Shown here: positions 1,960-64,000 of the stretch, piece by piece | Position numbering within the stretch: the first letter of the stretch is position 1 | Layout: the number at the start of each line of letters is the position of its first letter | Source of the DNA: Octopus sinensis | Lineage: Eukaryota | DNA: 64,000 nt | Assembly (NCBI RefSeq): GCF_006345805.1 | Contig: NC_043015.1 | Span: 24,924,001 to 24,988,000, forward strand | Direction of reading: 5' to 3' | Notes under the pieces: generated by a model | Database searches by the model: none | What the model was told of the DNA's origin: nothing | The model's input: the letters and a program-made list of their open reading frames with translations, nothing else | Position numbers and translations under genes: made by a program

Positions 1960-3144
1960 AACCACCTGTCATATCATTCCCACCACTAGCAGCACCACTG
2001 CCATCACTACCACTAGAACCAACACCACCAAAACTACTACTACTACTACTACTACTACTACTGCTGCTGCTGATAATGATGATGATGATGATGCAATTTA
2101 CAATGATGAGTTGGCAAATAAAAAAATGAAGGGAAACTGATACGGAAATGAATTATTCTAAAAGTTTAAAACCACATCAAATGGTAAACTGCAGAAGAGA
2201 GTGAATTAGGGATATGCTTTTTGGTGTTGTTTATATTGTTATTTGCAGTTGTTTCTCTGTAGTTCCAAGGTAATGATGTCTAACATTTATATATCGACAA
2301 ATATATACATAGATATACTTTTGAATCAATTAAGAATGATTAAGTTTAGGCATGCAAACGACTATCTTCACCTGTGGACATGTCTGAGAGACTTCATTAT
2401 GAACGATTTCAAATGTCGTGTCCCCATATATATATATGTATATATATGATATTGATAACTATATGCATACATATGTATGTATATGCATGTGTATATATAT
2501 ATATATGTAATTATATATATATACATATATATAAACCAGCGACCGCAAATCGCTAAGCCCACTCGCTTTCGACTCCACTACGAATGCACAGCTCATGAAC
2601 GGCTAAAAGTTAAGATTTCTTCTTTCAACCTCGCTCCTACTACCCTCTGCACGTATAATCACTATTCCTTCAGTTCCTTCAATTTCTCTCTCATATTTTC
2701 CTTCAAATTGACTTCTCTGATACTTTCAAACCTACTTTCTTGCTATCACGATTTTTCAGTACCCTCTATTCATATTTTCTTTCAGTTTTCAACATACCAT
2801 TCATGTAATGTTTTTCGTTTAGCCTCGTCTCCCTATTTGCTCCCGTTTCATAGCCACTCATCGTCTCCCCTAAACATTGACTTCTCTGATACTTTCAAAC
2901 CTACTTTCTTGCTATCACGATTAACAGAATCCTCTTGCTAGTTTGGGGTTGATCCGCCCACCCACCCCCTGCACACATGCCGGAAGTTCCTATTCTTTTC
3001 ATCCCTGGGTTGCTTCCCTTGAAGACTGCAAATGCTCTTTCACCATCCCTACCCCTAGTTTCGACCTAGGTAAGGTAATGATCATACAGTGCAAAATATG
3101 AATGGGTAGTGTTATGCAGGTTGAATTGAAGGCTACTGTATTAC

Positions 3145-6100
3145 TTGCTCATGAATTCTGCCAAATGCGAGCTTTCTTTTCAGGTACATGAAGCTACTGT
3201 CCACCGACGCAGGGTCCCTAGGGCCCATACCTCCCACACCCTCAGGGTTGGCACCCTCAACGTTGGCACACTGAAAGGTAGGTCTGGCGAGATAGTTGAG
3301 ATGCTTGAACGGAGACGTGTGGATATATGTTGTATGCAAGAAGTAAGGTGGAGAGGAGGTTCTGCTAGGTTCCTCACAGGCAAGGAACACAGGTACAAGA
3401 TTTTCTGGGCAGGGAACACTGACGGGGTTGGAGGCGTGGGTATACTTATCGCTGAGAAATGGGTAGATAAAGTAATTGAGGTAATCAGAGTATGCGACAG
3501 AATACTTAAGATTAGATTAGCGCTTCATCATAGTTTAGCAACCATTATATCAGCCTATGCTCCTCAGTCGGGGCTACCTGATGGACAGAAAGACCGATTC
3601 TATGACACTCTACTGCAGACTACCTCGTTGACGAACGACAGAGACCTTCTCTTTGTGGCTGGTGACTTCAATGGTCACGTTGGACGACATGCTGGGGGCT
3701 TCCACGGCGTACATGGAGGCTATGGCTCTGGTTCCCGCAACGAGAAGGGAACCAGGCTGCTGGAGTTCTGCGATGCAAATAATCTTATGATTTGCAACAC
3801 TAACTTCAGGAAACCTACCAGCCACCTAGTCACCTACCGATCGGGCCAACATACCAGCCAAATTGACTACATCCTTGCCAGGCAAAGGGAGAGATGGCTA
3901 CTTATAAATGCCAAAACCTTCCCAGGCGAAGAATGCACCCCACAACATAGACTGGTAGTTAGTGACTTTAGGATCAGGAGTAGGAGGACATCCAGAAGAC
4001 GACCAACATGGAGAAGAAGGATCTGGAAGCTTAAGGATCCTGTGAATGGACAGAGATTTAGAGACATGTTACTTGAAGCCTTTGACGAAGTAGAAGGGGA
4101 TAGTGTATCACATGGGGTAGAGGACAACTGGACGTTTCTAAGGGACAACCTGCTGAGAGCCACTGACCAGATCTGTGGCTGGTGCAAAGTCCCCTCTCGT
4201 CCCAAGGTAACGTGGTGGTGGAACAGTGTCGTAGACAGGGCTATTAGAGAAAAGAGACAGACTTGGAAGCACTGGAAGAATGGTGGTAGCAGGGAATTGT
4301 ATCAGACTGCTAAAAGGGAAGCTAGGAGACAGGTCTATCTAGCCAGAGGGGAAGCAGATAAGAAAAAATTTGCCAATGTTCTGCGCCGTGAGGACCAAAG
4401 ACTGGAGGTGTTTCGCGTTGCAAGACAGTGTGTGAGAGAGAATTGTGATGTGGTGGGAGAGAAGTGTGTTCGCATGGAAGATGGTTCACTTGTGCTAAAC
4501 GAGGATGCAAAGAGAGAGCTTGGAGACGCCACTATGAAAGGTTGCTGAATAAAGAAAATGAATGGGATAAAGAGAGTCTGCCGAACGTTGACCCAACAGA
4601 GGGACCAGCTATCAGGGTTGATAGTTCCTTAGTAGCTAAGGCAATTAGAAGCATGAAGACAGGGAAAGCCCCAGGCCCATCAGGTATCACTGCAGAGATG
4701 CTCAAAATATCTGGTAGTGTCGGCTATAGCCTAGTCACCTGTATAGTTAATCAGGTGATACATGAAGGAGTCATACCCAATGACTGGTGTAGCAGCATAA
4801 TAGTCAACTGCTACAAAGGTAAAGGTGATGCCCTAGATACAAATAATTACAGAGGTATCAAGCTGTTGGATCAGGTAATGAAGGTTACAGAGAGGGTCAT
4901 AAGCCAACTAATTAGAGAGAGAGTTAGTTTAGATGCAGTTTGGTTTCGTGCCAGGGAAAAGTACCACTGATGCTATATTCCTGGTAAGGCAGCTGCAGGA
5001 GAAATACCTAGCCAAAGATAAGGCCCTGCACCTGGCTTTTGTTGACATGGAGAAAGCCTTCGACAGGGTCCCCCGATCCCTCATATGGTGGTCAATGAGG
5101 AAACTAGGAATAGAAGAATGGTTAGTGAGAGCTGTGCAAGCCATGTACAGGGACGCTGCTAGTAAGGTGAGGGTTGGAAATGAGTACAGTGAAGAATTCC
5201 GGGTAGAGGTAGGGATCCACCAAGGCTCAGTCCTCAGCCCCCTCCTATTTATCATAGTCCTCCAGGCAATAACGGAGGTATTCAAGACAGGATGCCCCTG
5301 GGAGCTCCTCTATGCTGATGACCTTGCTCTAATTGCTGAGTCATTATCAGAACTGGAGAAGAAGTTTCAGGTGTGGAAGCATGGTTTAGAATCGAAGGGC
5401 CTTAGAGTCAACCTAGCTAAAACCAAAGTCCAAATAAGTAGGAAGGTAGACAAATCACAAACGCCTTCAGGTAGATGGCCCTGCTCGATCCGTAGAAAAG
5501 GTGTAGCTAGAAACTCTATAAGATGCACCAAGTGTAAGCTATGGACACATAAGAGGTGCAGCAATGTCATAGGAAGGCTAACTAGGAAGATGGTTTTTGT
5601 ATGTGGCAGATGCTCGGGAGCATTAACCTCTGAAAATCTGCAGAAAACAACTTCCGTCACTTTCCAGGGGGAAAAACTAGAAGTAGTTGATAGCTTCCGT
5701 TATCTTGGTGACCAAGTCAGTAGTGGGGGTGGGTGTGCTGAAAGTGTAACGGCTAGAGTAAGAATAGCCTGGGCAAAGTTTAGGGAGCTCTTACCTCTGT
5801 TGGTGACTAAAGGCCTCTCGCTCAGAGTAAAAGGCAGACTGTATGATGCATGTGTACGAACAGCCATGCTACATGGCAGTGAAACATGGGCCGTGACCGC
5901 TGAGGACATGCGTAAGCTCGCGAGAAATGAAGCTAGTATGCTCCGTTGGATGTGTAATGTCAGTGTTCATAGTCGACAGAGTGTAAGTACCTTGAGAGAA
6001 AAGTTGGACCTAAGAGGAATCAGATGTTGTGTGCAAGAGAGACGATTGCGCTGGTATGGTCATGTGGTGAGAATGGATGAAGATAGGTGTGTGAAAAAGT

Positions 6101-6267
6101 GCCACACCCTGGCAGTTGAGGGGACCTGTGGAAGAGGTAGACCCAGGAAAACCTGGGTCGAGGTGGTGAAGCACGACCTTCGAACTCTAGGTCTCACCAA
6201 GGAAATGACCAGAGACCGAGACCTATGGAAGTATGCTGTGCGTGAGAAGACCCGGCAAGACCAGTGA
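3145..6267 (+). pseudogene. RTE APE-RT polyprotein ORF (~1040 aa) broken by two mutually compensating frameshifts (~4520 and ~4930)
   Basis: ORFs 3145 and 4933 share a frame and the middle segment is in ORF 4464. Comparison with copies 2 and 4 indicates a 1-nt loss (gagagagcttggag vs gagagaggtttggag) and a 5-nt loss (ttagatgcag vs ttagatgagatgcag). Confidence 0.9.
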
Positions 6268-6314
6268 GAACAATCAAAATCAAATCATATATCAGAAAGC
6301 AGGGGTTAAGTGAC

Positions 6315-7110
6315 CCATCTGTTCGTGTCCGCTGTCAGCCTCGTCTGGCACCCGTGCCGGTGATACGTAAAAGCACCATTCGCTCATGGCCGTTTGCCAG
6401 CTCTGCCTGGCACCGTGTCGGTGGCACGTAAAAGCACCATCCGTTCGTGTTCGTTGCCAGCCTCGCCTGGCTCCGTGCCGGTGACACGTAAAAGCACCGT
6501 CCGTTCGTGGCCGTTGGCCAGCTCTGTCTGGCCCCGTGTCGGTGGCACGTAAAAGCACCATCCGTTCGTGGCCGTTTGCCAGCTCTGTCTGGCCCCGTGT
6601 CGGTGGCACGTAAAAGCACCAGCCGTCCGTGTCCGTTGCCAGCCTCGGCTGGCCCCCGTGCCGGTGACACGTAAAAGCACCATCCGCTCGTGGCCGTTTG
6701 CCAGCTCTGTCTGGCAACCGTGTCGGTGGCACGTAAAAGCACCATCTGTTCGCGTCCGTTGCCAGCCTCGGCTGGCCCCCGTGCCGGTGACACGTAAAAG
6801 CACCATCCGTTCGTGGCCGTTTGCCAGCTCTGTCTGGCCCCGTGTCGGTGGCACGTAAAAGCACCATCCGTCCGTGTCCGTTGCCAGCCTCGGCTGGCCC
6901 CCGTGCCGGTGACACGTAAAAGCACCGTCCGCTCGTGGCCGTTTGCCAGCTCTGCCTGGCAACCGTGTCGGTGGCACGTAAAAGCACCATCTGTTCGTGT
7001 CCGTTGCCAGCATCACCTGGCCCCGTGCCGGTGACACGTAAAAGCACCATCCATTCGTGGCCGTTCGCCAGCTCTGTCTGGCACCTGTGCAGGTGGCACG
7101 TAAAAAACAC
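6315..7110 (+). repeat. Tandem array of 13 ~60-62-bp units (two subtypes, mostly alternating A/B) in the RTE 3' UTR
   Basis: The anchor cgtaaaagcacc recurs at about 6366, 6427, 6487, 6548, 6609, 6670, 6731, 6793, 6854, 6915, 6977 and 7037, with a terminal variant at ~7099. Confidence 0.97.
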
Positions 7111-7339
7111 CCACTACACTCACGGAGTGGTTGGCGTTAGGAAGGGCATCCAGCCGTAGAAACACTGCCAGATCTGACTGGGCCTGACGAAGCCTTCCAG
7201 CTTCACAGACCCCAGTTGACCCGTCCAACCCATGCTAGCATGGAAAGCGGACGCTAAACGATGATGATAAACGATGATGATGTACGTATATATATATATA
7301 TGTATGTGTATATATATATATATATGTATGTATGTGGAT

Positions 7340-8100
7340 AAAGGAAATTATATGACCTTGGTGAGTGTGTATGCTCCAACTATGTGCTATACTGATGACA
7401 AAAAACTTTCTTTCTACCATGCTTTGAAGGGTATTATAAGAAATATCGCTCGGGCAGACAAAGTCATTGTACTGGGTGACTTTAATGCTAGAATGGACAT
7501 ATGGACTGTAATTGGAAAGCATGGGATGGGAAAGTGTAATAGTAATGGCATGCTTTTGCTGCAGATGTGTGAGGAGCTGTGTCTGTGTGTTACCAATACC
7601 ATGTTTCAACAAAAGAATAAGCTTAAGACTACATGGATGCACCCTGCATCTAAAGAATGGCATATTCTGGATTACATCCTAGTTAGGGTGCATGACAGAC
7701 AGGATGTACAGTGTGTTCATGTTCTTCGTGGAGCTGAGTGTTGGACTGACCACCGCCTATTACGCGCAAAAGTGAAATTAGTCACAATACATAAAATCCG
7801 AGCTGCAGGGATTACCCTGCCTAAAAGACTGAATGTTGATTGTCTTAGGTGTAATAGTGTGAAGAGAACTTTACAAGAGGAAGTGAATGCTGCAGATTTT
7901 GGGGAGGATTGGCCGACCCTTAAAAAGTCAGTTTATGATATAGGCAAGAAAGTTCTGGGATTGATACAAAGAAAGCATCAAGATTGGTTTAAAGAAAATG
8001 ATGAACATATAGATGATTTATTGGCTGATAAAATACGTACTTTGTCACGCTATTTGTCAGCAAAGTCACAGGAAAGGGAAGTGCTGCATAGGGAACTCAA
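7340..8100 (+). mobile_element. APE endonuclease fragment of a second (BovB-like) RTE-group LINE
   Basis: ORF 7274-8197 contains TLVSVYAPT, VIVLGDFNAR, GKCNSNGMLLLQMC, NTMFQ, TTWMHP, HILDYILV and WTDHRL, and is flanked by (TA)n. Confidence 0.9.
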
Positions 8101-10289
8101 GGATATATATATATATATATATGTACATATGTATGTGTATATATATATATATCAAAAGACGAAGACAGGTGATGTAGAAAACAAACAGATGTATTAGTAT
8201 AACACTCAGGAATAGAAAAAGTCTTTTACGTTTTGAGCCTACACTCTTCTACAGAAAAGGACACAGAAAAAACAAGGAGAGAAACAAAGAGAGAAAAAAA
8301 TATGTGTAGTGGCTAACGATCTATCATGTGTATAAATATATGTATGTGTATATATATATAATATATATATATATATACATACATATATATATATACATAC
8401 ATATATATATATGTGTATACAGTTGTGTAAATGCATATATATGAATGTATTCATATATGTACAGATGTACATAGGAATACATAGATGTAATTTGCATCAT
8501 CATCGTGATTTAAATGTCCAATTCCTAATGCTTGTTTCGGTTGACTGGAGTCTATTGAGGCTTGCCCTTCCTGCCAGATCCTTACCCATTTCCATGCAAG
8601 GTAATACTTCCTGTGCCCCACATGTTTTCAGAGATTATTAGCCCCATAAACGACAGTGATACTCATTTGCAACACTTCATATGTTGTCAAGATAAGGGGA
8701 CACAAACATACACACACAAATACATGATTGGCTTTTTACAGTTTCCATCTATCAGATCCACTCACAGGATATTGGTTGGCATGAGACTTTAATAGCAAAC
8801 TCTTTCAGAGGATGTCACACTGTGGAACTGAATCCAAAACCATGAGGTTGCAAAGCAAACTTCAGCCCCTTTCCCCTAATATATATGACAAGGTGCTAAA
8901 TAGTTCATGGCTTTGAGTAAAGGAAAATGTAGGGGGATCAGTTAATTATGGTTTTATTCAACATATTCCCCTCTCAAATTCACAAGCTTGGTCCTTCAGA
9001 TTGTTTAAGCCCTGTAAAAGAACTTAGAAGGTTTGGCTTCCAACTAGACCTTTCACAATCCCCTTAAAGCCAGGAATTTTTCAGCACTCCACTCCCAACC
9101 CGTATAATCAACAACTTCATTCCCATCATTAACCATTACATTTAAACAGCAGCTGGTTAGCATCAACATAATGAATTATTGCTTAAATTCACTCTTAAAG
9201 CATCTACTCTTTCTCTCCCAATATTCAGAGATCTGATCTCACTACTTCATCACATACAGTGTTCACCATTTGTATATTATGTCATTTAGATCAAAGTTTG
9301 TCTTTTTCTTCAGCATTTGTATCTTACCTTCATAGCATTGTTAAGCCACCTTCAGTACATCAGCTGATGTCTTTACAACCAATATTGAACACTGCTCAGA
9401 AAGATACTATAAGCTGCATCTAACAGTATGCTATGTACGTAATTAACCCATCATTCAAAACTTTGCTTTTACCATAGATGGTGGGAAGAAACCTTCAAAA
9501 CCACTTATCTCAGCTGAATTATGAGCTCCCATACAAAATTTAAACAGGACTGTTATTAAATATTTAATCCATGTAACACTACCGTATATTAGAGTATTTT
9601 ATCAAACTAATATCATCCTTTTAATCTTGCTCTTTGTGTCAATAATATTTTTGTATGATTCAGAAAAAATGAATTTAGTGTTAGATGTGTAATATTCTTT
9701 CCTATAATTTTTATTGGATTATTGATACCATTAATAGAACGGACACTTCTTAAAGCATGGGATTAATTCAATTCATACTTTTGTTGATTTTACTGATATT
9801 TGTCTTGATTTAGGTGTGAAGATTGTTCTGAGTTCAGCTTTGCCAAGATCATCACTCTAAGTTCAATCAAATATGATGTCAGGCAAGTGGCGGGAGCAAT
9901 AATATTGACTAAGCAACTACACCTCAAAATTTCTCACCTTATGCTTAAATTAGAAACAATTATTATTATGAGTTTTTTCTTCTTCCTTCAATTTTCTTTC
10001 CATTTTTGACAATTTTCTTACTGATATCTAAGCCAAAAGAAACTCTTTGTATACATCGATAGACCAGTCGAATAAACACATCTGATTGTTCATTTACAAA
10101 ATCCAATAAAGTTATGTAGAGAAAAAAACACTATTTGAATGAATGATAAACATTCTCACAGCAACAATGCTCTTCTTAATAGGTGTGACATCCCATTGAG
10201 GACAATCTTTTGAACTTCTTGCAAGGATGGTAAACCAGGGATCATTTTCAAATAATTTTCACTTCCTTATTTCATCATTCCAAGTGATC

Positions 10290-14352: not shown

Positions 14353-17040
14353 CATCATCATCATCATCATCATCATTTAACATCTGCTTTCCGTGCTAGT
14401 ATGGGTTGCACAATGTTGACTGAAGGCTGGCAAACCAGATGGCTGCACCAGGCTCGAGTCTTGATCTGGCAGAGTTTCTACAGCTGGATGCTCTTCCTAA
14501 CGCCAACCACTCCGAGAGTATAATGGGTGCTTTTTACGTGCCACCGCCATGGGGGCCAGTCAGCTGGTACAGGAAGAGACCTCACTCGAATCTTTTTACA
14601 CGTGCCACCAGCACAGGTGCCAGTAAGGCAATGCTGGTAACGATCACGCTTGAATGGTGCCCTTTTATGTGTCACAGGTAAGGAAGCCAGTTGGCTGCTC
14701 TGGCACTGATCATGCTCCGATGGTGTTCTTGGCACCCTACTAGCACAGGTATAAGTGCCAGTAAGGCGACACTGGTAACGATCATACTCGAATAGCCGCT
14801 TTGTCAATGATCACACTCGTGTGGTGCTCTGTGCACCCCGCTAGTACGGATGCCAGTCATAGAAATGATTTTGATTTTGATTTCACTTGCTTCAACAGGT
14901 CTTCGCAAGCAAAGTTTAGTGACCAAAGAAGGAAAAGGTACGCATAAGCGGGCTGGTTATGCCCCTGGCATAGGCCACAGGTTAAGGTCTCATCTGGCTT
15001 GCCGGGTCTTCTCGAGCATAGCATATTTCCAAAAGTCTCGGTCGCTAGTCATTTCTTTGGAGAGGCCTTATGTTCAAAGGTCATGCTTCACCACTTCATC
15101 CCAGGTCTTCCTGGGTCTACCTCTTACACAGGTTCCCTCAACCGCTAGGGTGTGGCACTTTCTCACACAGTTATCCTCATCCATTCTCACCACATGACCA
15201 TACCAGCACAGTCGTCTCTCTTGCACACTACATCTAATGCTTCTTAGGTCCAACTATTCTCTCGAGGTACTTACACACTGTTGAGTATGCACACTGACAT
15301 TACACATCCATCGAATGATACTGGCTTCATTCCTTGTAAGCTTATGCATATCCTCAGCAGTCACAGCCCATGTTTCACTGCCGTACAGCATGGCTGTTCA
15401 TACACATGCATCATACAGTCTACCTTTTACTCTGAGCGAGAGGCCCTTTGTCTCAAGCAGAGGTAAGAGCTCTCTGAACTTTGCCCAAGCTTTTCTTATA
15501 CTAGCAGCTACAGTTTCAGTGCACCCTCCTCTGCTACTGACATGGTCACCTAGGTAACGGAAGCTATCAACTACTTCTAGTTTTTCTCCCTGGCATGTGG
15601 CGGAAGTTGCTCTCTGCGCATTTTCAGTGTTTATCGCTCCCGAGCATCTGCCACATACAGAACCTATCTTCCCAGTTAGCCTTCCTTTGATATTACTGCA
15701 CCTCTTATGTGTCCATAGCTTACACTGGGTACATCTTATAGAGTTTCTACCTACCACTCTACAACAGATCGTGAAGGGCCATCTACCTGAAGGGATTTGT
15801 GGTTTGCCTGCCTTCCTACTTATTAGGAATTTGGTTTTAGCTAGGTTGACTCTAAGGCCCTTCGATTCTAATCCTTGTTTCCACACTTGAAACTTCTTCT
15901 CTAGTTCTGATAGTGACTCAGCAATTAGAGCAAGGGCGTCAGCACAGAGGGAGCTCCCAGGGGCATCCTGTCTTGAATTCCTCCATTAATGCCTGGAGGA
16001 CTATGATAAATAGGAGGGGGCTGAGGACTGAACCTTGGTGGACCTCTACCTCTACCCGGAATTCTTCACTGTACTCGTTGCCAACCCTCACCTTACTGAC
16101 AGTGTCCATGTACATGGCTTGCACAGCTCTCACTAACCATTCATCTATCCCTAGTTTCCTCATTGACCACCAGATAAGGAATCGGAGGACCCTGTCAAAG
16201 GCTTTCTCCATGTCAACGAAAGCCAGGTACAAGGTCATATCTTTGGCTAGGTATTTCTCCTGCAGCTGTCTCATCAGAAATATGGCATCAGTGGGGCTTT
16301 TCCATGGCACAAATCAAACTGCATCTCATCCAATTTTACTCTCTCCCTAATCAGTTGGGCCTGGGGCTTTCCCAGTCTTCATGCTTCTAATTGCCTTAAC
16401 TACCAAGGAACTGTCAACTCAGATAGCTGGTCCCTCTGTTGGGTCAACATTCGGTAGACTCTCTTTATCCCATTCATTTTCTTTATTCAGCAACCTTTCA
16501 TAGTGGCGTCTCCAAACCTCTCTCTTTGCATCCTCATTTAGCACAAGTGAACTGTCATCCATGCGAACACATTTCTCTCCTACCACATCACTCTTACACA
16601 CTGTCTTCCAACACGAAATACCTCAAGTCTTTCATCCTCATGGCGCAGAACATTGGCAATTTTTTTCTTATCTGCTTCCTCTCTGACTAAATAAACCTGC
16701 CGCCTAGCTTCCCTTCTGGCAGTCTGATACGCTTCCCTGCTACCACCGTTTTTCCAGTCCTTCCAAGCCTGTTTCTTTTGTCTAATAGCCCTGTCAACAA
16801 TATTGTTCCACCACCACGTTATTTTGGGTCAAGAGGGGACTTTGCACCATCCACAGATCTGGTCGGTGGCCCTTAGCAGGTTGTCCTGTAGGAACCTCCA
16901 GTTGTCTTCTACCCCATGTGAAGCTATTTCCCCTTCTATTTCGTCAAAGACTTTGAGTAATATGTCTCTGAAACTCTCAACTTGCGGGATCTTTAAGTCT
17001 CCAGACCATTCTTCTCTTTGCTGGTCATCTTCTGGGCATC
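14352..17040 (-). mobile_element. 5'-truncated, internally deleted RTE LINE (copy 2)
   Basis: Minus-strand ORFs 16419-16601, 15939-16310 and 15398-15886 are homologous to copy 1. There is a ~230-bp deletion at ~16360 (GKAPG joined to QLIRE), a divergent 3' array at 14520-14850 and a (CAT)n tail at 14352. Confidence 0.93.
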
Positions 17041-24100: not shown

Positions 24101-24574
24101 TGATGGTGGTGGTAGTGATTAGATAGTGAAAAGTGTATTTTTTTAATTGAACTTCCTCATATCACCTATCATTTAACACATGCATGTAAGTGCAATTCCA
24201 TGAAATATTCACGCTTATTTATGTGGCAGACATATGCAATTTAAATAAAGGTTGTATCACATGTACAGGATATTTGGGGTTTTTTTTCTTCCTTTATGGG
24301 AAACATGGAAAAATAAGAGTGAATATTTATTTTGAGTACTGTGATTTAAGTCTATAAAACTGTTCAGAAATTATATAAAGTGGATTAAGTAATCATCCTA
24401 TTCCAATTTCCTTCACTTTCCTGTGATTAGCAGATGAGTGACCATCTTTCCATACAGACATAACACAGGCTACACTTTCAGGTTTTTTGGATAAAACTTT
24501 CAGAAATAACACCATTGATTTATTATTAATTCCATGAAATATTCGTGGATTCCATTGGATATGAAGGTGCACTA

Positions 24575-24800
24575 TCCAAACATGATCGATGCCAGGCCTG
24601 CCTGACTGGCTCCTGTGCCGGTGGCATGTAAAAAGCACCCACTACACACTTGGAGTGGTTGGTGTTAGGAATGACATCCAGCTGTAGAAACCTTGCCAAA
24701 TCAGATTGGAGCCTGGTGCAGCTGCTGGCTCTCCAGACCTCAGTCAAAACGTCCAACCCATGCCAGCATGGAAAACGGACGTTAAACAATGATGATAATG
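24575..24800 (+). mobile_element. RTE 3'-tail-only insertion (one array unit + terminal domain + (GAT)n). Similar copies: 19255-19450 +, 47350-47630 +, 49905-50130 -, 57500-57660 +, 58470-58620 +
   Basis: cctgtgccggtggcatgtaaaaagcacccactacac...ggaatgacatccagctgtagaaac...ccaacccatgccagcatggaaaacggacgttaaac. Confidence 0.85.
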
Positions 24801-48421: not shown

Positions 48422-50267
48422 ATAGAAAGGTTGGCTTTTCTTTGGACAGATCTTATATATTTGAATTTTAAATGTTTGAAATATTATCAAACTTGATTCC
48501 AATAATGATTGCAATGTAAATGAATTCAGAATATTATCTTACACATTTATCTGTTTTTATTTTTTTCCCAATTTAATTATTTAAAATCTTACACTGAAAA
48601 ATGTCAAGAGATCAGAAACTGAATTACTCTTAATTAGCAAAAATAATTATTTATTAAAATAATAAACAGGCTTAAATATCAACAGTGGAATGATTACTAT
48701 TTTCTCCATTCAATCTACATGACTACAGAACATCTACCAGTTATTGCTATTTGACCAATACTGCCAAGGTCAACTTTGCCTTTCATCCTTTCAGTTTCAA
48801 TGAAATAAGCATGATTTATGCCTAGGGTCAATGTAATGGACTATTTTCCTCCCCCTACAAAATTTCAGGCCTTGTGCTTATAGTAGAAAGGATTATTTGT
48901 TCTGTTCAATGACAAAAAAGCTAAAAAAAAAACAAAAATAAAAATATACATACATACATATGTATATACATAAATACATACATACATATACATACATACA
49001 AACATATATATATACAACAGTCTTCTTTCAGTCTCCATCTACCAAATCCATTCACACAGCATTGGTCAGCCTAGGGCTACAGTAGCCCAAGTTCCCATGC
49101 AGTGGGACTGAACCTAGAACTATGAGATTGTGAAGTAAACTTCTTACCACACACGCACACTTTCACCTATGATTGATGAAGTATAAATCACATCTCACCA
49201 CCAAGTGGTACTTCCCTGTGACCAGGTGTACTCGGCTATTGAGCAATAAGTGTATTAAAATGAGAGGAGCAGTGAGAGGGCAAGACTTAGTCCAGTCAAC
49301 TATTCATGACCTGATCAATCATAACAATCAAATTATGATAGAACAAATATGTGATCACAAATTTACATTTATCTTGAAATATTTGGAAATTAAACGATTA
49401 GGAAAGACATCGTAGCTTATTGGAAATATATATGTCACACTCTACACACCTGTTTATATTGAGTTAATTTGTAGCTGTACATACACAGTTAATTGGTTTA
49501 GATTACTTTCTATTACAGAATCCAATTTTCATATTAACACCATCAAATTATTTAATCTAGATGTCGACTGATTTTTAACTAATTGTTGATGAGGTTTCAG
49601 CATGTTTGCTGCACATGCAATTCATTAAAACTTAAAAGATACACAATTATACCGTTACCTAAAGAAATCAATATTGATCAATGACTAATATTACCTTCAT
49701 TTTATTTGGCAACTATGGGGGACAACTCTGGGCATGCTTCAGTATATTCTGATCTCATCAGTTAGGTTTATATTTATCATAGGAATATGATGATGACAAT
49801 GATGATGATGATAAGGAGGAGGAGGGGGATTAAGACACTGATGATGATGATGATGATCAATATAAATATTTAGATGTTGATATGGCTGTGTGTAACAAGT
49901 ATGCTTCCACGTTGTTTAATGTCCGCTTTCCATGTTGGTATGAGTTGGACGCGTTGACTGAGGGCTGGCAAGCCAGAAGGCAGCACCAGGCTCCAATCAC
50001 ACTCGAATAGTGCTTTTTATGTGCCACTATTACAGGACCAGTCACCCGGCACTAGCATTAATCATGCTCAAATGGTGCTTTTTACATACCATCGGCACAG
50101 GTACCAATAAGGTGGTACTGTCATCAGCCAAGTTCTGCTGTGTGTACCTTGGGCAAGTGTCTTTTACTATAGGCCCTGGTCATCTAGTGCCTTGTGTAGA
50201 CAGAAACTGAAATAAGACCATTCTGTATGTGTGTACATGTGTGTGTGTGTGTGTGAGTACATATATA

Positions 50268-52599: not shown

Positions 52600-55500
52600 C
52601 ATCATCATCATCATCATCGTTTAACGTCCGTTTTCCGCGCTAGCACGGGTTGGACGGTTCGACCAGGGTCTGGGGAGCCAGGGGGTGCTCCAGGCTCCAA
52701 TCTGATCTGGCAGTATTTCTACAGCTGGATGCCCTTCCTAACACCAACCACGCCGCAAGTGTAGTGGGTGCTTTTTACGTGCCACTGGCACAGAAGCCAG
52801 TCGAGGCGGTGCTGGCATCGGCCACGTTCGGATGGTGCTTTTTATGTGCCACCGGCACAGAAGCCATTCGAGGCGGGGTTGGCATCGGTCACGTTCGGAT
52901 GGTGCTTTTTATGTGCCACTGGCACAGAAGCCAGTCGAGGCTGCACTGGCAACAGCCATGTTCAGATGGTGCTTTTTATGTGTCACCGGCACAGGTATCA
53001 CAACTACTGTTTCCATTGATATTTGGTTCAATGTTCATGTACATGCACTTGACTCAACAGGTCTCCTCAAGCACAGCGAGATGTTCCGGGATCCAAGGTA
53101 CTTTGAATGGGCAGGGGGTATGCGGAACTGGTGCGGGAAGCATCCCGGGTCTTAGTAGTCACAGCACATCTCCAGAGATCTCGGTCCTTCACCATTGCCT
53201 CAGTGAGGCCCAACACTCTGAGGTCATGCTTGACTACCTCATCCCATGTCTTCCTGGCTCTACCTCTCCTCCTGATTCCTTCAACTGTTCGGGAGTGGCA
53301 CTTCTTCACACATCTCTCCTCATCTATCCGCAGTACATGACCATACCATCGCAAGCGTTGCTCTTGCACACCGCATCTGATGCTTCTTATGCCTAGCATT
53401 TCTCTCAGGGTGCTTACACTCTGTCGTGCATTCACACTGACATTACACATCCAGCGGATCATGCTAGCTTCATTTCTTTCAAGTCTACGCATGTCCTCTG
53501 TAGTCACGGCCCATGTTTCACTGCCGTGAAGCATGGCAGTTTGCACACATGCATCATACAATCTACCTTTCACTCTGAGTGAGAGACCCTTTGTCGCCAG
53601 TAGGGGTAGGAGCTTTCTAAACTTTGCCCAGGCTATTCGTATTCTAGTGGTGACACTCTCTGAGCATCCACCCCCACTACTAACTTGGTCACCCAGGTAA
53701 AGGAAACTATAAACTACTTCTAGTTTCTACCCCTGGAGTGTGATGGAATCTGTTTTCTGAGTGTCTGTGGTGTCTATTGTCCCTGTGCATCTGCCGCACA
53801 TGAAAGCTATCTTATCAGTTACTTTCCCTTTGATGTTGCTGCACCTCTTATGCGTCCATAGCTTACACTGGGTGCATCTTATGGAGTTTCTACCTACACC
53901 TTTCCTACAGCTCGAGCAGGGCCACCTGCCCGATGGGGTGTGTGCTGAGTTCACCTTTCTGCATACTATAACTTTGGTCTTCGCTACATTTACTCTAAGG
54001 CCCTTTGATTCTAACCCTTGTTTCCACACCCGAAATTTCTTTTTTAGTTCCGGTAGTGATTCTGCTATGAGGGCCAGGTCATCAGCATAGAGGAGCTCCC
54101 AGGAGCAACCTGTTTTGAATTCCTCTGTTATTGCCTGGAGGACTATGATGAATAAAAGGGGACTGAGGGCTGAGCCCTGGTGTACACCTACTTCTACCCA
54201 GAATTCTTCACTATATTCGTTGCCAATCCTAACCTTGCTGACAGCCTCTCTGTATAGAGCCTATACAGCCCTTATTAGCCATTCGTCAATCAACAGTTTC
54301 CGCATCGACCACCAGATAAGGTATCGGGGAACCCTGTCAAAGGCTTTCTCCAAGTCCACAAAAGCTATGTAGAGGGGTTTATCTTTAGCTAGGTACTTCT
54401 CCTGCAGTTGTCGGACCAGGAATATAGCATCAGTGGTGTTTCTACCTGGCACAAAACCGAACTGCATCTCATCTAAGCAAATTCTCTCCCTAATGAGATG
54501 GGTTATGACCCTCTCTGTGGCCTTCATCACCTGATCGAAGAGTTTAATACCCCTGTAGTTATTTCTATCTAGAGCATCACCCTTACCCTTATAGCAGTTG
54601 ACTATGGTGCTGCTACGCCAGTCATTGGGTATGACTCCATTATGAACTACCTGGTTAACAATATGGGTGACTAGGCTGTTTTAAGCATCTCAGCAGTGAT
54701 ACCTGATGGGCCGGGGGCTTTACCTGGTTTCATATCCTTAATTGCCTTAACTACAAGGGAGCTGTCTATTTGGATAGCTGGTTCCTCTACTGGGTCAACA
54801 TTTGGCAGGCTCTCCTCCTCCCATTCATTCTCTACATTCAGCAGTCTTTCATAATGGCTTCTCCAAGACTCTTTCTTTTCACCAACATTAAAGGCAAGTG
54901 TCCCATCATCCATGCGGACACATTTCTCTCCTGTAACATCACCATTTTCTCTCACACACTGTCTAGCAATATGAAATACTTCAGTTCTTTGGTCCTCACA
55001 TCGCTGGACATTGGCAAACTTCTTTTCTGCTATATCTTTGGCTATGTATACCTGCTGCCCAGCCTCCCTTTTGGCTACTTGGTATGGTTCCCTGCTACCC
55101 CCATCACTCCAGGCTCTCCAGGCCTGTTTCTTAGAACTAATGGCTTTGTCTACTGCACTATTCCACCACCACGTAACTCTAGGTCTGGAAGGAACTTTGC
55201 ACCATCCACAGACTTGGTTTGTGGCACTCAGCAAGCTGTCCCGTAGGAATTTCCAGCTACCTTCTATGTCCGACGTCTGTAGCTCCTCCTCCCTCTCATC
55301 AAATTTCTTGATGAGGATGTCCCTAAATCTCTGACCATGTGAAGGGTTCTTTAGCTTCCAAATCCTTCTTTTCTGGATTGGTCTGTTTCTTGGAGTCCTT
55401 CTGGCCTCAAGCCTAAAGTCACTAATTATTAGCCTATGCTGAGGGATACACTCTTCACCCGGGAGAGTCTTTGTATTTAAGAGCGACCCTGCATCCAGCT

Positions 55501-59812: not shown

Positions 59813-60257
59813 TCATCATCATCATCATCATCGTTTAACGTCCGCTTTCTATGCTAGCATGGGTTGGACGGTTCAACTGGGGTCTGGCAAGCCCGAAGGC
59901 TGCACCAGGCCAGTCAGATCTGGCAGTGTTTCTACAGCTGGATGCCCTTCCTAACGTCAACCACTCCGAGAGTGTAGTGGGTGATTTTATGTGCCACCAA
60001 CACAGGTGCCAGACGAGGCTGGCAGACGGCCACGCTCGGATGGTGTTTTTTATGTGCCACCGACATAGGTGCCAGACGAGGCTGGCAGACGGCCACGCTC
60101 GGATGGTGTTTTTTATGTGCCACCGACACAGGTGCCAGACGAGGCTGGCAGACGGCCACGCTCGGATGGTGTTTTATGTGTCACCGACACAGGTGCCAGA
60201 CGAGGCTGGCGAACGGCCACGCTCGGATGGTGTTTGTTACGTGCCCTCAGCACGGCG

Positions 60258-60262
<5 letters not shown>
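59810..60262 (-). mobile_element. Non-coding RTE 3' module (4-5 array units + terminal domain + (GAT)n tail)
   Basis: Near-identical units gtgccaccgacacaggtgccagacgaggctggcagacggccacgctcggatggtgttttttat; no ORF-derived sequence; flanked by (TA)n. Confidence 0.9.
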
Positions 60263-63797: not shown

Positions 63798-64000
63798 GTT
63801 TAACGTCCGTTCTCCATGCTAGTATGGGTTGGACAGTTCAACCGGGGATCTGGGAAGCCAGGAGGCTGCACCAGGCTCCAGTCTTATCTGGCAGTGTTTC
63901 TACAGCTAGATGCCCTTCCTAACGTCAACCACTCCGTGAGTGTAGTGGGTGCTTTTTAAGTGCCACCTGCACAGGTGCCAGGCGAGGCTGGCAACGGCCA
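63765..64000 (-). mobile_element. RTE 3' terminal domain + first array unit, running off the window
   Basis: (CAT)n-cgtttaacgtccg...ggatgcccttcctaacg...gtgccacctgcacaggtgccaggcgaggctggc. Confidence 0.9.

What the first reader, a model, noticed from the sequence alone, without database searches (positions are those of the whole stretch)
6315..7110. RT-linked array of structured RNA modules arranged as mutually complementary A/B pairs
Seen: 13 units follow the RT stop codon in the order A-B-A-B-B-A-B-A-B-A-B-A-B. Each unit has a GCCAG-x-CTGGC hairpin, then a CGTG(C/T)C-GGT-G(A/G)CACG stem, an A-rich linker (TAAAAG) and CACC. CACC can pair with the GGTG loop, which is an H-type pseudoknot geometry. 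Folded alone, the A stem (GTGCC/GACAC) has a C-A mismatch and the B stem (GTGTC/GGCAC) has a wobble. Cross-paired A with B, both 5-bp arms are Watson-Crick, so the alternation looks compensatory. Inference: the array may be a selected RNA structure (RT-template recognition, exonuclease block, processing or ribozyme unit) rather than a neutral minisatellite. From memory, GGCACGTAAAAG resembles the core of the MetaSINE central domain; this is unverified.
Basis: partly seen in the sequence, partly recalled or inferred. Interest (0 to 1): 0.78.

Follow-up and report, generated by a model that had tools for sequence, protein, structure and literature searches.

The report
Octopus LINE 3'UTR stem-loop repeat array
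The 13-unit array is the expandable tandem-repeat part of the 3' untranslated region of a young octopus LINE retrotransposon, built from an old conserved two-hairpin RNA module; the A/B alternation comes from copying a two-unit block, and nothing shows it was selected for pairing between units.

Summary
Window 6315-7105 holds 13 units of 60-62 nt in the stated A/B order, each with GCCAG..CTGGC, CGTG(C/T)C-GGT-G(A/G)CACG, TAAAA and CACC. The array lies 47 nt after the stop codon of a frameshifted APE-RT-PHD LINE and before a conserved 3' tail ending in (ATG)n.

The unit is not private to this array. Most related LINE subfamilies in this roughly 2.7-Gb Octopus genome carry 0-7 copies before the same tail. 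The 20-nt core GGTGGCACRTAAAA(N)CACC also sits in the 3'UTRs of distant LINE relatives from other hosts, so the module is probably a selected cis element.

The A/B pattern is a dimeric higher-order repeat. Unit body and stem type are linked (aA 142, bB 151, 7 exceptions), and arrays range from 7 to 39 units across 28 near-identical insertions. Sister subfamilies have all-perfect or all-B stems. Inter-unit pairing is predicted about as strongly for those as for A/B.

Covariation is uninformative. Helix 1 is invariant, and the one varying pair in helix 2 is confounded by CpG decay. The pseudoknot is possible but unproven. The MetaSINE link could not be tested, and no tRNA heads were found. Cnidarian relatives lack the array, so it is not the RT's primary recognition site.

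The parts
3130..4548 (+). LINE ORF, N-terminal part with the apurinic-type endonuclease domain. This copy is frameshifted near 4450-4550.
   Evidence: Open frame. Pfam Exo_endo_phos E 5.4e-10 and Exo_endo_phos_2 E 2.9e-07.
4449..4970 (+). Middle ORF piece in another frame, covering the linker and start of the RT. A second frameshift lies near 4933-4970.
   Evidence: Overlapping open frames. No Pfam hit on this piece.
4933..6267 (+). Reverse transcriptase plus a C-terminal Cys/His (PHD-type) region. The stop codon TGA is at 6265-6267.
   Evidence: Pfam RVT_1 E 2.7e-25. Homologues carry PF00078+PF00628. The closest named proteins are from Octopus vulgaris and O. bimaculoides at 83-84% identity.
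6268..6314 (+). Short 3'UTR leader between the stop codon and the array.
   Evidence: Sequence. The same leader precedes the array in sister insertions.
6315..7105 (+). The array: 13 units of 60-62 nt arranged as a dimeric (A+B, 122 nt) higher-order repeat.
   Evidence: TRF gives 82% matches at period 61 and 89% at periods 122/245. Segmentation is and unit typing.
6315..6372 (+). Unit 1, partial, A-like (CGTGCC GGT GATACG).
6373..6433 (+). Unit 2, B (b body, CGTGTC GGT GGCACG, U.G wobble).
6434..6493 (+). Unit 3, A (a body, CGTGCC GGT GACACG, C.A mismatch).
6494..6554 (+). Unit 4, B.
6555..6615 (+). Unit 5, B. The B-B neighbour pair is inherited, since most sister insertions begin A-B-A-B-B.
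6616..6676 (+). Unit 6, A.
6677..6738 (+). Unit 7, B.
6739..6799 (+). Unit 8, A.
6800..6860 (+). Unit 9, B.
6861..6921 (+). Unit 10, A.
6922..6983 (+). Unit 11, B.
6984..7043 (+). Unit 12, A.
7044..7105 (+). Unit 13, the terminal type (b body, CTGTGCAGGTGGCACG). It is the fixed last unit before the tail in all copies and in most subfamilies.
7106..7135 (+). Start of the conserved tail: CACC followed by the small hairpin CACTC-ACG-GAGTG.
   Evidence: Sequence. The same sequence is present in all sampled subfamilies and in L122.
7136..7165 (+). Highly conserved tail motif GCGTTAGGAAGGGCATCCAGCCGTAGAAAC.
   Evidence: 63,619 forward and 63,397 reverse matches (up to 2 mismatches) in the genome, against 0 for the reversed control. 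A similar AGGAAGGGTATCCGGCC occurs in the distant relative L170.
7222..7253 (+). Terminal stem-loop CGTCC..CCATGC-TA-GCATGG..GGACG, the likely RT recognition element.
   Evidence: Nearly identical in the Hydractinia (L121) and L123 relatives, which lack the array. The consensus fold shows one AU-to-GC double change in an Octopus subfamily.
7255..7283 (+). 3' microsatellite (GAT/ATG)n, the end of the element.
   Evidence: TRF row 7255-7281. The (ATG)n end is shared with the Hydractinia, Mercenaria and L122 relatives.

Best explanation
The array is the variable-number tandem-repeat region in the 3'UTR of a young, recently active LINE of an Octopus genome. The element has a single ORF with APE endonuclease, RT and a PHD-type finger, and ends in a conserved tail, a terminal stem-loop and (ATG)n.

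Shown:
- Each 61-nt unit is a copy of an older 3'UTR module: CACCAT.., hairpin 1 GCCAG/CTGGC with a free loop, hairpin 2 (C/U)GUGCC-GGU-GGCAC(G/A), an A-run, then CACC.
- The module occurs 0-7 times before the same tail in most related subfamilies.
- Its 20-nt core is also found in the 3'UTRs of distant LINE relatives in other hosts.
- In this family a two-unit block was amplified head to tail into a dimeric higher-order repeat. The block is an 'a' body with a G-to-A change in the 3' arm plus a 'b' body with a C-to-U change in the 5' arm.
- Copy number changes mostly in steps of two units, from 7 to at least 39.

Inferred:
- The A/B complementarity is a by-product of two single transitions hitting the two sides of one base pair of a palindromic stem, carried along by block duplication. 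It is not a selected inter-unit duplex.
- The module acts at the RNA level as a dosage-tolerant cis element of the LINE transcript. It would be a protein-binding hairpin or small pseudoknot serving RNP assembly, export or stability.
- The terminal stem-loop plus microsatellite, not the array, is what the RT primarily recognises.
- Array length changes arise by template switching or slippage between identical units during reverse transcription, or by unequal exchange after insertion.
For: Anatomy.

Young, dispersed family: the A-B dimer has at least 40 copies at 97-99% identity on many chromosomes.

Higher-order repeat:
- TRF identity is 82% at period 61 and 89% at 122/245.
- In 28 insertions, body and stem type are linked: aA 142, bB 151, with only 7 recombinant types.
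- Neighbour pairs are b>a 123, a>b 111, b>b 21 and a>a 0.
- Every complete array ends aA, terminal unit, tail.
- Lengths such as 9, 11, 13 and 15 units recur, across a range of 7-39.

Module older than the array:
- 70 semi-random tail loci carry 0-7 units in many diverged subfamilies.
- Conservation peaks on the arms, GGTGGCAC, TAAAA and CACCAT, and drops in the loop and spacer.
- The 73%-identity RT relative L122 keeps GTGNNGGTGGCACGTAAAA.CACC but has a different first hairpin, GTGTCA/TGGCAC.
- L130 has yet another 10-bp first hairpin before the same core.
- L170 has the core after a decayed homologous RT C-terminus, E 5e-7.

Against a need for A/B:
- All-perfect and all-B arrays exist in sister subfamilies.
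- Cross-pair probability is 0.82 for A/B, 0.68 for the same array with perfect stems, 0.58 for L059 and 0.88 for the all-B array.
- Other subfamilies have other higher-order periods, 345 bp and 197 bp.

The array is not needed for RT recognition: L121 (Hydractinia) and L123 lack it but keep the terminal stem-loop and (ATG)n.
Against: - The two stem changes fall exactly on the two sides of one base pair and are mutually complementary. With about one new substitution in the B unit and 61 positions, I estimate the chance at roughly 0.01-0.02. This is a post hoc rough figure, so selection or a templated mutational mechanism is not excluded.
- The thermodynamic model does place the inter-unit duplex in the minimum-energy fold.
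- No covariation supports any helix of the module. H1 is invariant and the varying H2 pair is CpG-confounded. An RNA-level role therefore rests on conservation, on replacement of hairpin 1 by other hairpins in two relatives, and on more U.G than C.A variants. Those variant counts are not phylogenetically independent.
- Sampling is limited to 28 young copies and 70 tail loci from one part of one chromosome. The genome-wide census was blocked.
- The function is wholly inferred.
Confidence: 0.68

Rival explanations
1. The A/B alternation is selected because A and B units pair with each other. Each A 5' arm pairs with a B 3' arm and each A 3' arm with a B 5' arm, building a defined inter-unit RNA architecture that the element needs.
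For: - Both cross-paired arms are fully Watson-Crick, while each local stem is flawed.
- The minimum-energy folds of the A-B and B-A dimers and of a 6-unit array use the cross pairing, and the local H2 probability is about 0.
- A-A neighbours are never seen in 28 arrays.
- The coincidence of complementary transitions on one pair has a rough chance of 0.01-0.02 (my estimate).
Against: - Stem type is inherited with unit body, so alternation follows from block duplication. The absence of a>a pairs is expected from that alone.
- B-B neighbours are tolerated and inherited, 21 cases.
- Successful sister subfamilies are all-perfect or all-B.
- Cross pairing is predicted almost as strongly without the A/B changes, and the all-perfect version is more stable, -163.3 against -156.3 kcal/mol.
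- No other subfamily in the sample shows complementary unit types.
Confidence: 0.1
2. A neutral minisatellite. The units have no function, and their conservation reflects recent common descent and homogenisation within arrays. The array simply rides along in a tolerant 3'UTR.
For: - Copy number varies 7-39 among near-identical insertions without evident cost.
- The 3'UTR is duplication-prone at several scales.
- No covariation was found.
- Tandem repeats in hypervariable retrotransposon 3'UTRs are a known phenomenon (PMC9659126).
- Cnidarian relatives do without the units.
Against: - Old subfamilies have position-specific units 20-30% diverged from each other that still keep both arm pairs, the A-run and CACC, while the loops and spacers drift.
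- The 20-nt core persists in L122, L130, L131, L171 and L170, where the flanks are unrelated.
- A fixed terminal unit type is kept across subfamilies.
Confidence: 0.17
3. The unit is homologous to the Meta-domain, the 66-bp highly conserved central domain of MetaSINEs. The array would then be a tandem of a known ancient SINE domain, carried here by a LINE.
For: - The unit is 61-67 nt, against 66 bp for the Meta-domain.
- RT homologues at 50-57% identity occur in Hydractinia, a bivalve and lancelets. MetaSINEs are reported from Hydractinia, bivalves, a lancelet and the cuttlefish Sepia.
- The core motif is present in unrelated hosts.
Against: - The Meta-domain sequence is not in any text available here, so no sequence comparison was possible.
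- MetaSINEs start with a tRNA-derived head directly followed by the domain. ARAGORN found no tRNA-like head in 60 Octopus tail loci or in 14 other loci checked (13 metagenome-scan loci plus L122).
- The Hydractinia LINE relative has no unit.
Confidence: 0.2
4. A DNA-level role. The GC- and CpG-rich palindromes act as protein-binding sites, as an internal or antisense promoter, or as cruciform-forming DNA, rather than as RNA.
For: - Both stems are perfect DNA palindromes.
- The array is about 60% G+C in an AT-rich genome.
Against: - U.G-type variants (tolerated only in sense-strand RNA) outnumber C.A-type ones, about 94 to 48, and the U.G state is fixed in whole subfamilies.
- Hairpin 1 is replaced by unrelated hairpins in L122 and L130.
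- The element is copied through RNA, so selection on the master acts on the transcript.

No direct test was possible.
Confidence: 0.05

Closest known systems
Tandem repeats in hypervariable 3'UTRs of retrotransposons, such as Ogre Ty3/gypsy PisTR-A, and satellites derived from the L1 and CR1 3'UTRs (reviewed in PMC9659126; PMC7004042)
   Same: The array is a tandem repeat between the last ORF and the 3' end of a retroelement. Copy number varies between copies, and the region is prone to higher-order duplication.
   Different: Here the unit is itself an old conserved module with two inverted repeats and a core motif conserved across hosts. It is carried by a non-LTR element. No free-standing satellite derived from it was looked for.
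Stringent-type LINE 3' recognition stem-loop with a terminal microsatellite, as in eel UnaL2 and zebrafish ZfL2 (Kajikawa and Okada 2002, cited in PMC4824008 and PMC4758252)
   Same: The element has a conserved 3' terminal stem-loop followed by a short tandem repeat, and the tail is shared by a very large number of truncated copies.
   Different: That description fits the terminal stem-loop at 7222-7253, not the array. The array lies 120-900 nt upstream, varies in number, and is absent in relatives that keep the terminal stem-loop.
Highly conserved domains of SINE superfamilies: the Meta-domain (66 bp), and the V-domain 40-bp subdomain predicted to form a stem-loop (PMC4824008; PMC4758252)
   Same: The module is a 60-70-nt non-coding retroposon element with a core conserved across distant animal hosts, a predicted stem-loop character and unknown function.
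   Different: It sits in a LINE 3'UTR, is tandemly repeated, and has no tRNA head. Sequence identity with any named domain could not be tested.
Higher-order repeats of satellite DNA, such as alpha-satellite dimers, and the VNTR of SVA elements (general knowledge)
   Same: Two diverged monomer types alternate, identity is higher at the multimer period, and expansion and contraction occur in multimer steps.
   Different: The array is short (0.4-2.4 kb), lies inside a mobile element, and is copied through an RNA intermediate. Length change may therefore arise during reverse transcription.
Small H-type pseudoknots with an A-rich third loop, such as the luteovirus frameshift pseudoknot and the preQ1-I riboswitch (general knowledge)
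   Same: If the top pair of hairpin 2 opens, the geometry would be S1 of 5 bp (CGUGC/GCACG), L1 of 1 nt, S2 of 4 bp (GGUG/CACC) and L3 of 6-7 nt (UAAAAG).
   Different: There is no covariation, no probing data and no Rfam match. The pairing competes with the sixth pair of hairpin 2 and with inter-unit pairing.

Membership tests
Non-LTR retrotransposon (LINE) 3'UTR | An ORF with APE endonuclease and reverse transcriptase directly upstream on the same strand. | tested here: met
   Pfam Exo_endo_phos, Exo_endo_phos_2 and RVT_1 on 3130-6267. The stop codon is at 6265-6267 and the array starts at 6315.
Non-LTR retrotransposon (LINE) 3'UTR | A common 3' end shared by many dispersed, variably 5'-truncated copies. 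| tested here: met
   The tail motif has about 127,000 matches in the genome. Among 70 sampled loci, 0-7 units remain upstream of the tail, and many are cut inside the array or the tail.
Non-LTR retrotransposon (LINE) 3'UTR | Target-site duplications flanking full insertions. | not tested
   The 5' ends of copies were not fetched.
Higher-order (dimeric) tandem repeat / VNTR | Higher identity at the multimer period than at the monomer period. | tested here: met
   82% matches at period 61 against 89% at periods 122 and 245.
Higher-order (dimeric) tandem repeat / VNTR | Monomer types inherited as a block, with copy number varying between copies. | tested here: met
   Types aA 142 and bB 151 against 7 recombinant types. 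Arrays range from 7 to 39 units in 28 insertions, mostly differing by two units.
Selected RNA secondary structure (helices H1 and H2) | Compensatory (covarying) base-pair changes beyond what mutation bias gives. | tested here: inconclusive
   On A1 the covariation score is 0.111 against 0.103 for shuffles (60 of 500 shuffles as high). On A2, 0 of 500 shuffles are as high, but 34 of the 49 double-change cells come from one pair (CG 39, UA 33, UG 30, CA about 18) that lies on CpGs in both arms. H1 is about 95% invariant.
Selected RNA secondary structure (helices H1 and H2) | Stems conserved while loops vary, and the structure kept with a different sequence in relatives. | tested here: met
   Arm columns score 0.81-0.98 against 0.4-0.7 for the loop and spacer. 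H1 loops range from 6 to about 11-13 nt, with one 16-nt outlier. L122 and L130 have unrelated first hairpins before the same core.
H-type pseudoknot (GGUG loop with downstream CACC) | Complementarity of the loop to the downstream segment, with loop lengths that allow both helices. | tested here: inconclusive
   GGTG/CACC pairs in 88-96% of cells but never covaries. Both helices can coexist only if the sixth H2 pair opens (inference). The 5' base of that pair is the most variable stem column, C88/T25/G13/A4, while its partner G is kept.
H-type pseudoknot (GGUG loop with downstream CACC) | Experimental or covariation proof of the tertiary pairing. | not testable with these tools
   This needs SHAPE or DMS probing with mutate-and-rescue, or many more independent lineages.
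MetaSINE / Meta-domain | A tRNA-derived pol III head immediately 5' of the domain. | tested here: not met
   ARAGORN found no tRNA-like gene in 60 Octopus tail loci, or in the 13 metagenome-scan loci and L122 that were checked. The units follow a LINE ORF instead.
MetaSINE / Meta-domain | Sequence similarity to the 66-bp Meta-domain consensus. | not testable with these tools
   The consensus is printed only in a figure and no supplement text is held. Full-text searches for the unit's core strings found no relevant paper.
Stringent-type LINE RT recognition element | Sits at the extreme 3' end next to the terminal microsatellite and is kept in all relatives using the same RT clade. | tested here: not met
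   The array ends 150 nt before the microsatellite and is absent from L121 (Hydractinia) and L123, which keep the terminal stem-loop.
Any Rfam family | A match at or near the family's gathering score. | tested here: not met
   Only sub-threshold chance hits were found. The best in the array is NLPC-P60 at 18.9 bits against a gathering score of 53.7. The microRNA hits lie on a (TA/TG)n microsatellite.

The most novel reading that the evidence does not exclude
The 61-67-nt unit is a LINE-borne copy, possibly the source, of an ancient metazoan retroposon domain such as the Meta-domain. Its 20-nt core GGUGGCAC(G/A)UAAAA-CACC would fold with the preceding arm into a small A-rich-loop pseudoknot that binds a conserved protein partner. 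The octopus lineage would then have turned a single-copy element into an expandable multi-copy array, in which the A/B changes bias pairing between neighbouring units.
Probability: 0.12. Interest if true: 0.7.

Novelty: new member of a known kind. Interest (0 to 1): 0.36.

Why it matters
The tail that follows this array matches about 127,000 sites, so these elements form one of the most abundant repeat groups in an octopus genome. Octopus LINE activity is currently debated in connection with brain function (PMC9115989, PMC12988792, PMC13282606).

Three practical consequences follow:
- Knowing that the 3'UTR holds a conserved, copy-number-variable module helps annotate these elements. Arrays of 0.4-2.4 kb would otherwise be called satellites or 'unknown' repeats.
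- The array gives a marker for subfamily history.
- The work points to a short core motif, conserved across hosts, that could be tested for a protein partner.

If the unit proved to be the same as a named SINE highly conserved domain, it would offer a rare LINE-side origin for such a domain. The origin and function of those domains remain open. As it stands, the A/B 'compensation' that made the finding look special is most simply explained as a higher-order repeat.

Tried and rejected
- Rfam scan of 5800-7600 at E up to 10. Nothing relevant was found, and the mir-297-like hits are a (TA/TG)n microsatellite.
- Covariation on a MAFFT alignment of 42 short-loop units (A1) and on a CM-fitted alignment of 125 units (A2), with and without the pseudoknot. 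There was no usable signal beyond one CpG-confounded pair.
- Checking the MetaSINE claim. The paper text, its supplements, a later bivalve SINE paper, a mollusc SINE paper, and full-text searches for core strings of the unit and of the tail motif all gave no printed sequence to compare.
- Metagenome scan for GGTGGCACRTAAAAN{0,2}CACC. It returned 71 hits, about the number expected by chance, and most are bacterial coding sequence. Only four or five element groups (L130/L165, the L131 group, L171, L169/L170/L182, perhaps L138) extend the similarity.
- Search for tRNA heads. None were found.
- A genome-wide census of the four body-by-stem combinations, to look for intermediate families, could not be run.
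- I first judged the pseudoknot sterically impossible because of the 3-nt loop. I withdrew that: it is feasible if the sixth H2 pair opens.
- Minus-strand ORFs of up to 273 aa across the array come from a stop-free repeat and are not genes.
- The clade name of the LINE (RTE-like or other) was not settled. Only the domain content and the named relatives are reported.
Full report
**What is there**

Window 6315-7105 is a single tandem array. Tandem Repeats Finder gives period 61 with 12.9 copies at 82% matches, and a better fit at periods 122 and 245 (89%). Cutting at ACGTAAAA yields 13 units of 60-62 nt. Their second-stem types run A-B-A-B-B-A-B-A-B-A-B-A and then a B-like last unit.

Every full unit reads GCACCATCCG..CGTG..(T)GCCAG-loop-CTGGC-spacer-CGTG(C/T)C-GGT-G(A/G)CACG-TAAAA. 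Unit 1 is partial, and unit 13 is a separate terminal type (CTGTGCAGGTGGCACG).

The array begins 47 nt after the stop codon (6265-6267) of an ORF with an APE-type endonuclease and a reverse transcriptase. Homologues add a PHD finger (Pfam). In this copy the ORF is split over three frames.

About 150 nt of conserved tail follow the array. It has four parts:
- a small hairpin, CACTC-ACG-GAGTG;
- the motif GCGTTAGGAAGGGCATCCAGCCGTAGAAAC;
- a terminal stem-loop, CGTCC..CCATGC-TA-GCATGG..GGACG;
- a (GAT)n microsatellite ending near 7283.

**Host and family**

The window belongs to a 2.72-Gb eukaryotic assembly. The closest named proteins are from Octopus vulgaris and O. bimaculoides at 83-84% identity, so the host is an Octopus species. 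From memory the assembly statistics fit O. sinensis; I did not verify this.

The A-B dimer has at least 40 copies at 97-99% identity on many chromosomes, which marks a young LINE family. The tail motif matches 63,619 forward and 63,397 reverse sites with up to 2 mismatches, against none for the reversed control.

**The unit is older than the array**

The window holds other copies on the minus strand with the same tail:
- 52,622-53,300: an RT C-terminus, four 67-nt units and the tail;
- 59,829-60,260: four 63-nt units and the tail;
- fragments at 14.5, 24.6, 50.0 and 63.9 kb.

Seventy semi-random tail loci from chromosome 1 carry 0-7 units before the tail: 9, 15, 13, 14, 10, 5, 2 and 2 loci for 0 to 7 units. 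Many are 5'-truncated inside the array.

Clustering 138 distinct units gives 63 clusters and about 14 unit types seen at two or more loci. Old subfamilies have position-specific units that differ by 20-30% yet keep both arm pairs, the A-run and CACC.

Across cluster consensuses the conserved columns are:

| Segment | Conservation |
|---|---|
| GCACCAT | 0.87-1.0 |
| GCCAG | 0.86-0.97 |
| CTGGC | 0.86-0.98 |
| GTG | 0.81-0.98 |
| GGTGGCAC | 0.76-0.97 |
| TAAAA | 0.86-1.0 |
| First loop, spacer and middle of the 5' part | 0.4-0.7 |

First-hairpin loops range from 6 to about 11-13 nt, with one 16-nt outlier.

**Relatives in other hosts**

- A metagenome scaffold encoding an RT 73% identical (L122) has about four modules with GTGNNGGTGGCACGTAAAA.CACC but a different first hairpin (GTGTCA-CGTGAA-TGGCAC). 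The same tail motifs follow.
- The Hydractinia homologue (57%, L121) and another contig (58%, L123) have no units at all. Their ORFs run straight into a terminal segment, CCGTCCAACCCATGCTAGCATGGAAAA(C/T)GGACGTTAA plus (ATG)n. This is almost identical to the octopus end.
- A clam homologue keeps only the (ATG)n end.
- A metagenome scan for the 20-nt core gave 71 hits, about the chance expectation. Several element groups extend the similarity:
  - L171 (TTGTGCCGGTGGCACGTAAAAGCACC).
  - L130/L165, which have a 10-bp unrelated first hairpin before GTGCCGGTGGCACATAAAACACC.
  - The L131 group.
  - L170/L182/L169. L170 has the core downstream of a decayed ORF homologous to the window's RT C-terminus (31% over 81 aa, E 5e-7). 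It also has AGGAAGGGTATCCGGCC, which resembles the octopus tail motif.

The core is therefore an old 3'UTR component of this LINE group. The octopus lineage multiplied it.

**The A/B pattern is a higher-order repeat**

In 28 insertions of the young family the arrays have 7-39 units.

- The unit body (a: GTGTCCGTT-GCCAGCCTCGG; b: GTGGCCGTTTGCCAGCTCTGT) and the stem type are tightly linked. Counts are aA 142 and bB 151, against bA 3, aB 1 and bX 3.
- Neighbour pairs are b>a 123, a>b 111, b>b 21 and a>a 0.
- Every complete array ends aA, terminal unit, tail.
- Most arrays start A-B-A-B-B, and lengths such as 9, 11, 13 and 15 recur, so change is mainly in two-unit steps.
- An a body with a perfect stem exists in a closely related subfamily (L059, L072, L096). 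There the b body is only the terminal unit.

This suggests a history: an internal unit and a chimera of terminal-type and internal-type units were amplified as one block, each carrying one transition. Other subfamilies have other higher-order periods, 345 bp in L053 and 197 bp in L076. The 3'UTR is duplication-prone in general.

**Is the complementarity selected?**

The sequence facts are right. The A 5' arm (CGTGCC) matches the B 3' arm (GGCACG), and the B 5' arm (CGTGTC) matches the A 3' arm (GACACG). RNAfold puts this 7+7-bp inter-unit helix in the minimum-energy fold of both dimers (z = -2.07 against shuffles).

Four points weigh against selection:
- The 63-nt subfamily has B-type stems in all units with no A partner, and the 67-nt and L059 subfamilies have perfect stems throughout.
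- Because every unit carries the same palindrome, any 5' arm can pair with any 3' arm. The partition function gives maximal cross-pair probabilities of 0.82 (A/B array), 0.68 (the same array with stems set to perfect, which is also 7 kcal/mol more stable), 0.58 (L059) and 0.88 (all-B array).
- Alternation and the absence of A-A neighbours follow from block duplication.
- Inherited B-B neighbours are tolerated.

What remains is a coincidence. Two transitions fall on the two sides of one pair, which I put at roughly 1-2% by chance (post hoc, rough).

**Structure evidence**

- Helix 1 (GCCAG/CTGGC) is about 95% invariant, so it cannot covary.
- In helix 2 the only pair with many double changes is the outermost (CG 39, UA 33, UG 30, C.A about 18). 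Both of its sides sit in CpGs, so CG>TG and CG>CA decay alone give this pattern. The observed UA count (33) is close to the independence expectation (about 27).
- The short-loop alignment shows no excess covariation, with 60 of 500 shuffles as high.
- The GGUG/CACC pairing is conserved but never compensated. Its first pair reads GC 70, A.C-type 21 and AU 1.
- Supportive but weaker observations:
  - Stems are conserved while loops are free.
  - Hairpin 1 is replaced by unrelated hairpins in L122 and L130.
  - U.G-producing variants (about 94) outnumber C.A-producing ones (about 48), and U.G is fixed in whole subfamilies. These counts are not independent.
- The pseudoknot is geometrically possible only if the sixth pair of helix 2 opens: S1 5 bp, L1 1 nt, S2 4 bp, L3 6-7 nt A-rich. 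The 5' base of that pair is the most variable stem column (C88/T25/G13/A4) and its partner G is kept. This fits either a pseudoknot or a plain sequence constraint on GGTGGCAC.
- Rfam has nothing.

**How it most likely works**

Shown: the array is a dimeric higher-order VNTR of an old 3'UTR module in a young octopus LINE.

Inferred:
- The module acts in the transcript as a dosage-tolerant cis element, such as a protein-binding hairpin or small pseudoknot for RNP assembly, export or stability.
- The RT's primary recognition site is the terminal stem-loop plus microsatellite. That site is conserved from octopus to a cnidarian and shows one AU-to-GC double change in an octopus subfamily.
- Array length changes by template switching or slippage between identical units during reverse transcription, or by unequal exchange after insertion.

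**Comparison with known things**

- Tandem repeats in hypervariable retrotransposon 3'UTRs, and satellites derived from them, are well documented (PMC9659126, PMC7004042).
- Conserved 3' stem-loops with microsatellites are the hallmark of stringent-type LINEs (cited in PMC4824008 and PMC4758252).
- 40-70-nt conserved domains of unknown function are known from SINE superfamilies. One is predicted to form a stem-loop (PMC4758252).
- I found no description of this octopus array in the searchable literature. Octopus repeat papers do not mention it.
- The MetaSINE link is untested. The domain length (66 bp) and the host range of the RT relatives fit, but the defining tRNA head is absent and the consensus could not be read.

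**Limits**

- The young family is therefore represented by 28 insertions, and the wider superfamily by 70 loci from one part of chromosome 1.
- The census of intermediate unit types could not be made.
- No experiment bears on function.

**Verdict**

The feature is real and accurately described. It is best filed as a new member of a known kind: a LINE 3'UTR tandem-repeat region with a higher-order structure, built from a conserved stem-loop module. The 'compensatory A/B' reading is not supported, though not strictly excluded. Interest is moderate to low (0.36). It would rise if the unit proved identical to a named ancient SINE domain or if the pseudoknot or inter-unit duplex were shown experimentally.

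Noticed in passing
window 7222-7262; L121 4374-4412; L123 4824-4862: The last roughly 40 nt of the LINE tail (CGTCCAACCCATGCTAGCATGGAAA.CGGACG.TAA) are almost identical between the Octopus element, a Hydractinia (cnidarian) element whose RT is only 57% identical, and a third contig. In the latter two this segment overlaps the end of the ORF. This means either extreme conservation of the RT recognition site or horizontal transfer.
   Followed up: partly
window 7136-7165, and genome-wide: The tail motif GTTAGGAAGGGCATCCAGCYGTAGAAA has about 127,000 matches in the 2.72-Gb genome, roughly one per 21 kb. That makes this LINE tail group one of the most abundant repeats. A similar AGGAAGGGTATCCGGCC occurs in the unrelated-host element L170.
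   Followed up: partly
window 52622-53300 (-), 59829-60260 (-), 14524-14726 (-), 24569-24641 (+), 50007-50144 (-), 63946-64000 (-): Six further copies or fragments of related LINE 3' ends lie in the same 64-kb window. They belong to at least three other subfamilies, with 67-nt and 63-nt units and old diverged units.
   Followed up: yes
window 7271-8197 (+): Directly after the element's microsatellite a second, different LINE fragment begins. It is an open frame of 308 aa with an endonuclease domain (Exo_endo_phos_2, E 4e-08).
   Followed up: no
window 3130-6267: The LINE ORF of this copy is split over three frames, with overlaps near 4449-4548 and 4933-4970. This copy is therefore not coding-competent although its family is young.
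   Followed up: partly
L053 412-1358; L076 1601-2360: Sister subfamilies have larger higher-order tandem duplications of the 3'UTR, each containing leader sequence plus units. The periods are 345 bp (2.8 copies) and 197 bp (4.0 copies).
   Followed up: partly
L027 705-3116: One insertion of the young family has at least 39 units (over 2.4 kb) and runs to the edge of the fetched stretch. That is three times the length of the window's array.
   Followed up: partly
window 7280-7340: Sub-threshold Rfam hits to mir-297, mir-3149, mir-1277 and mir-466 fall on a (TA/TG)n microsatellite and are artefacts of low-complexity sequence.
   Followed up: yes
window, whole: Microsatellite density is very high, with 105 TRF rows in 64 kb. 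Many are AT, ATn and trinucleotide runs, often right at the 3' ends of the LINE copies.
   Followed up: no
L131, L161, L174, L185, L195 (metagenome contigs): Five contigs from one series of metagenome samples share the same roughly 500-bp element. It contains GAAAGTGTGGGTGGCACGTAAAACACCATAC, so the core motif sits in a repeated element of some other host. No RT was found nearby.
   Followed up: partly
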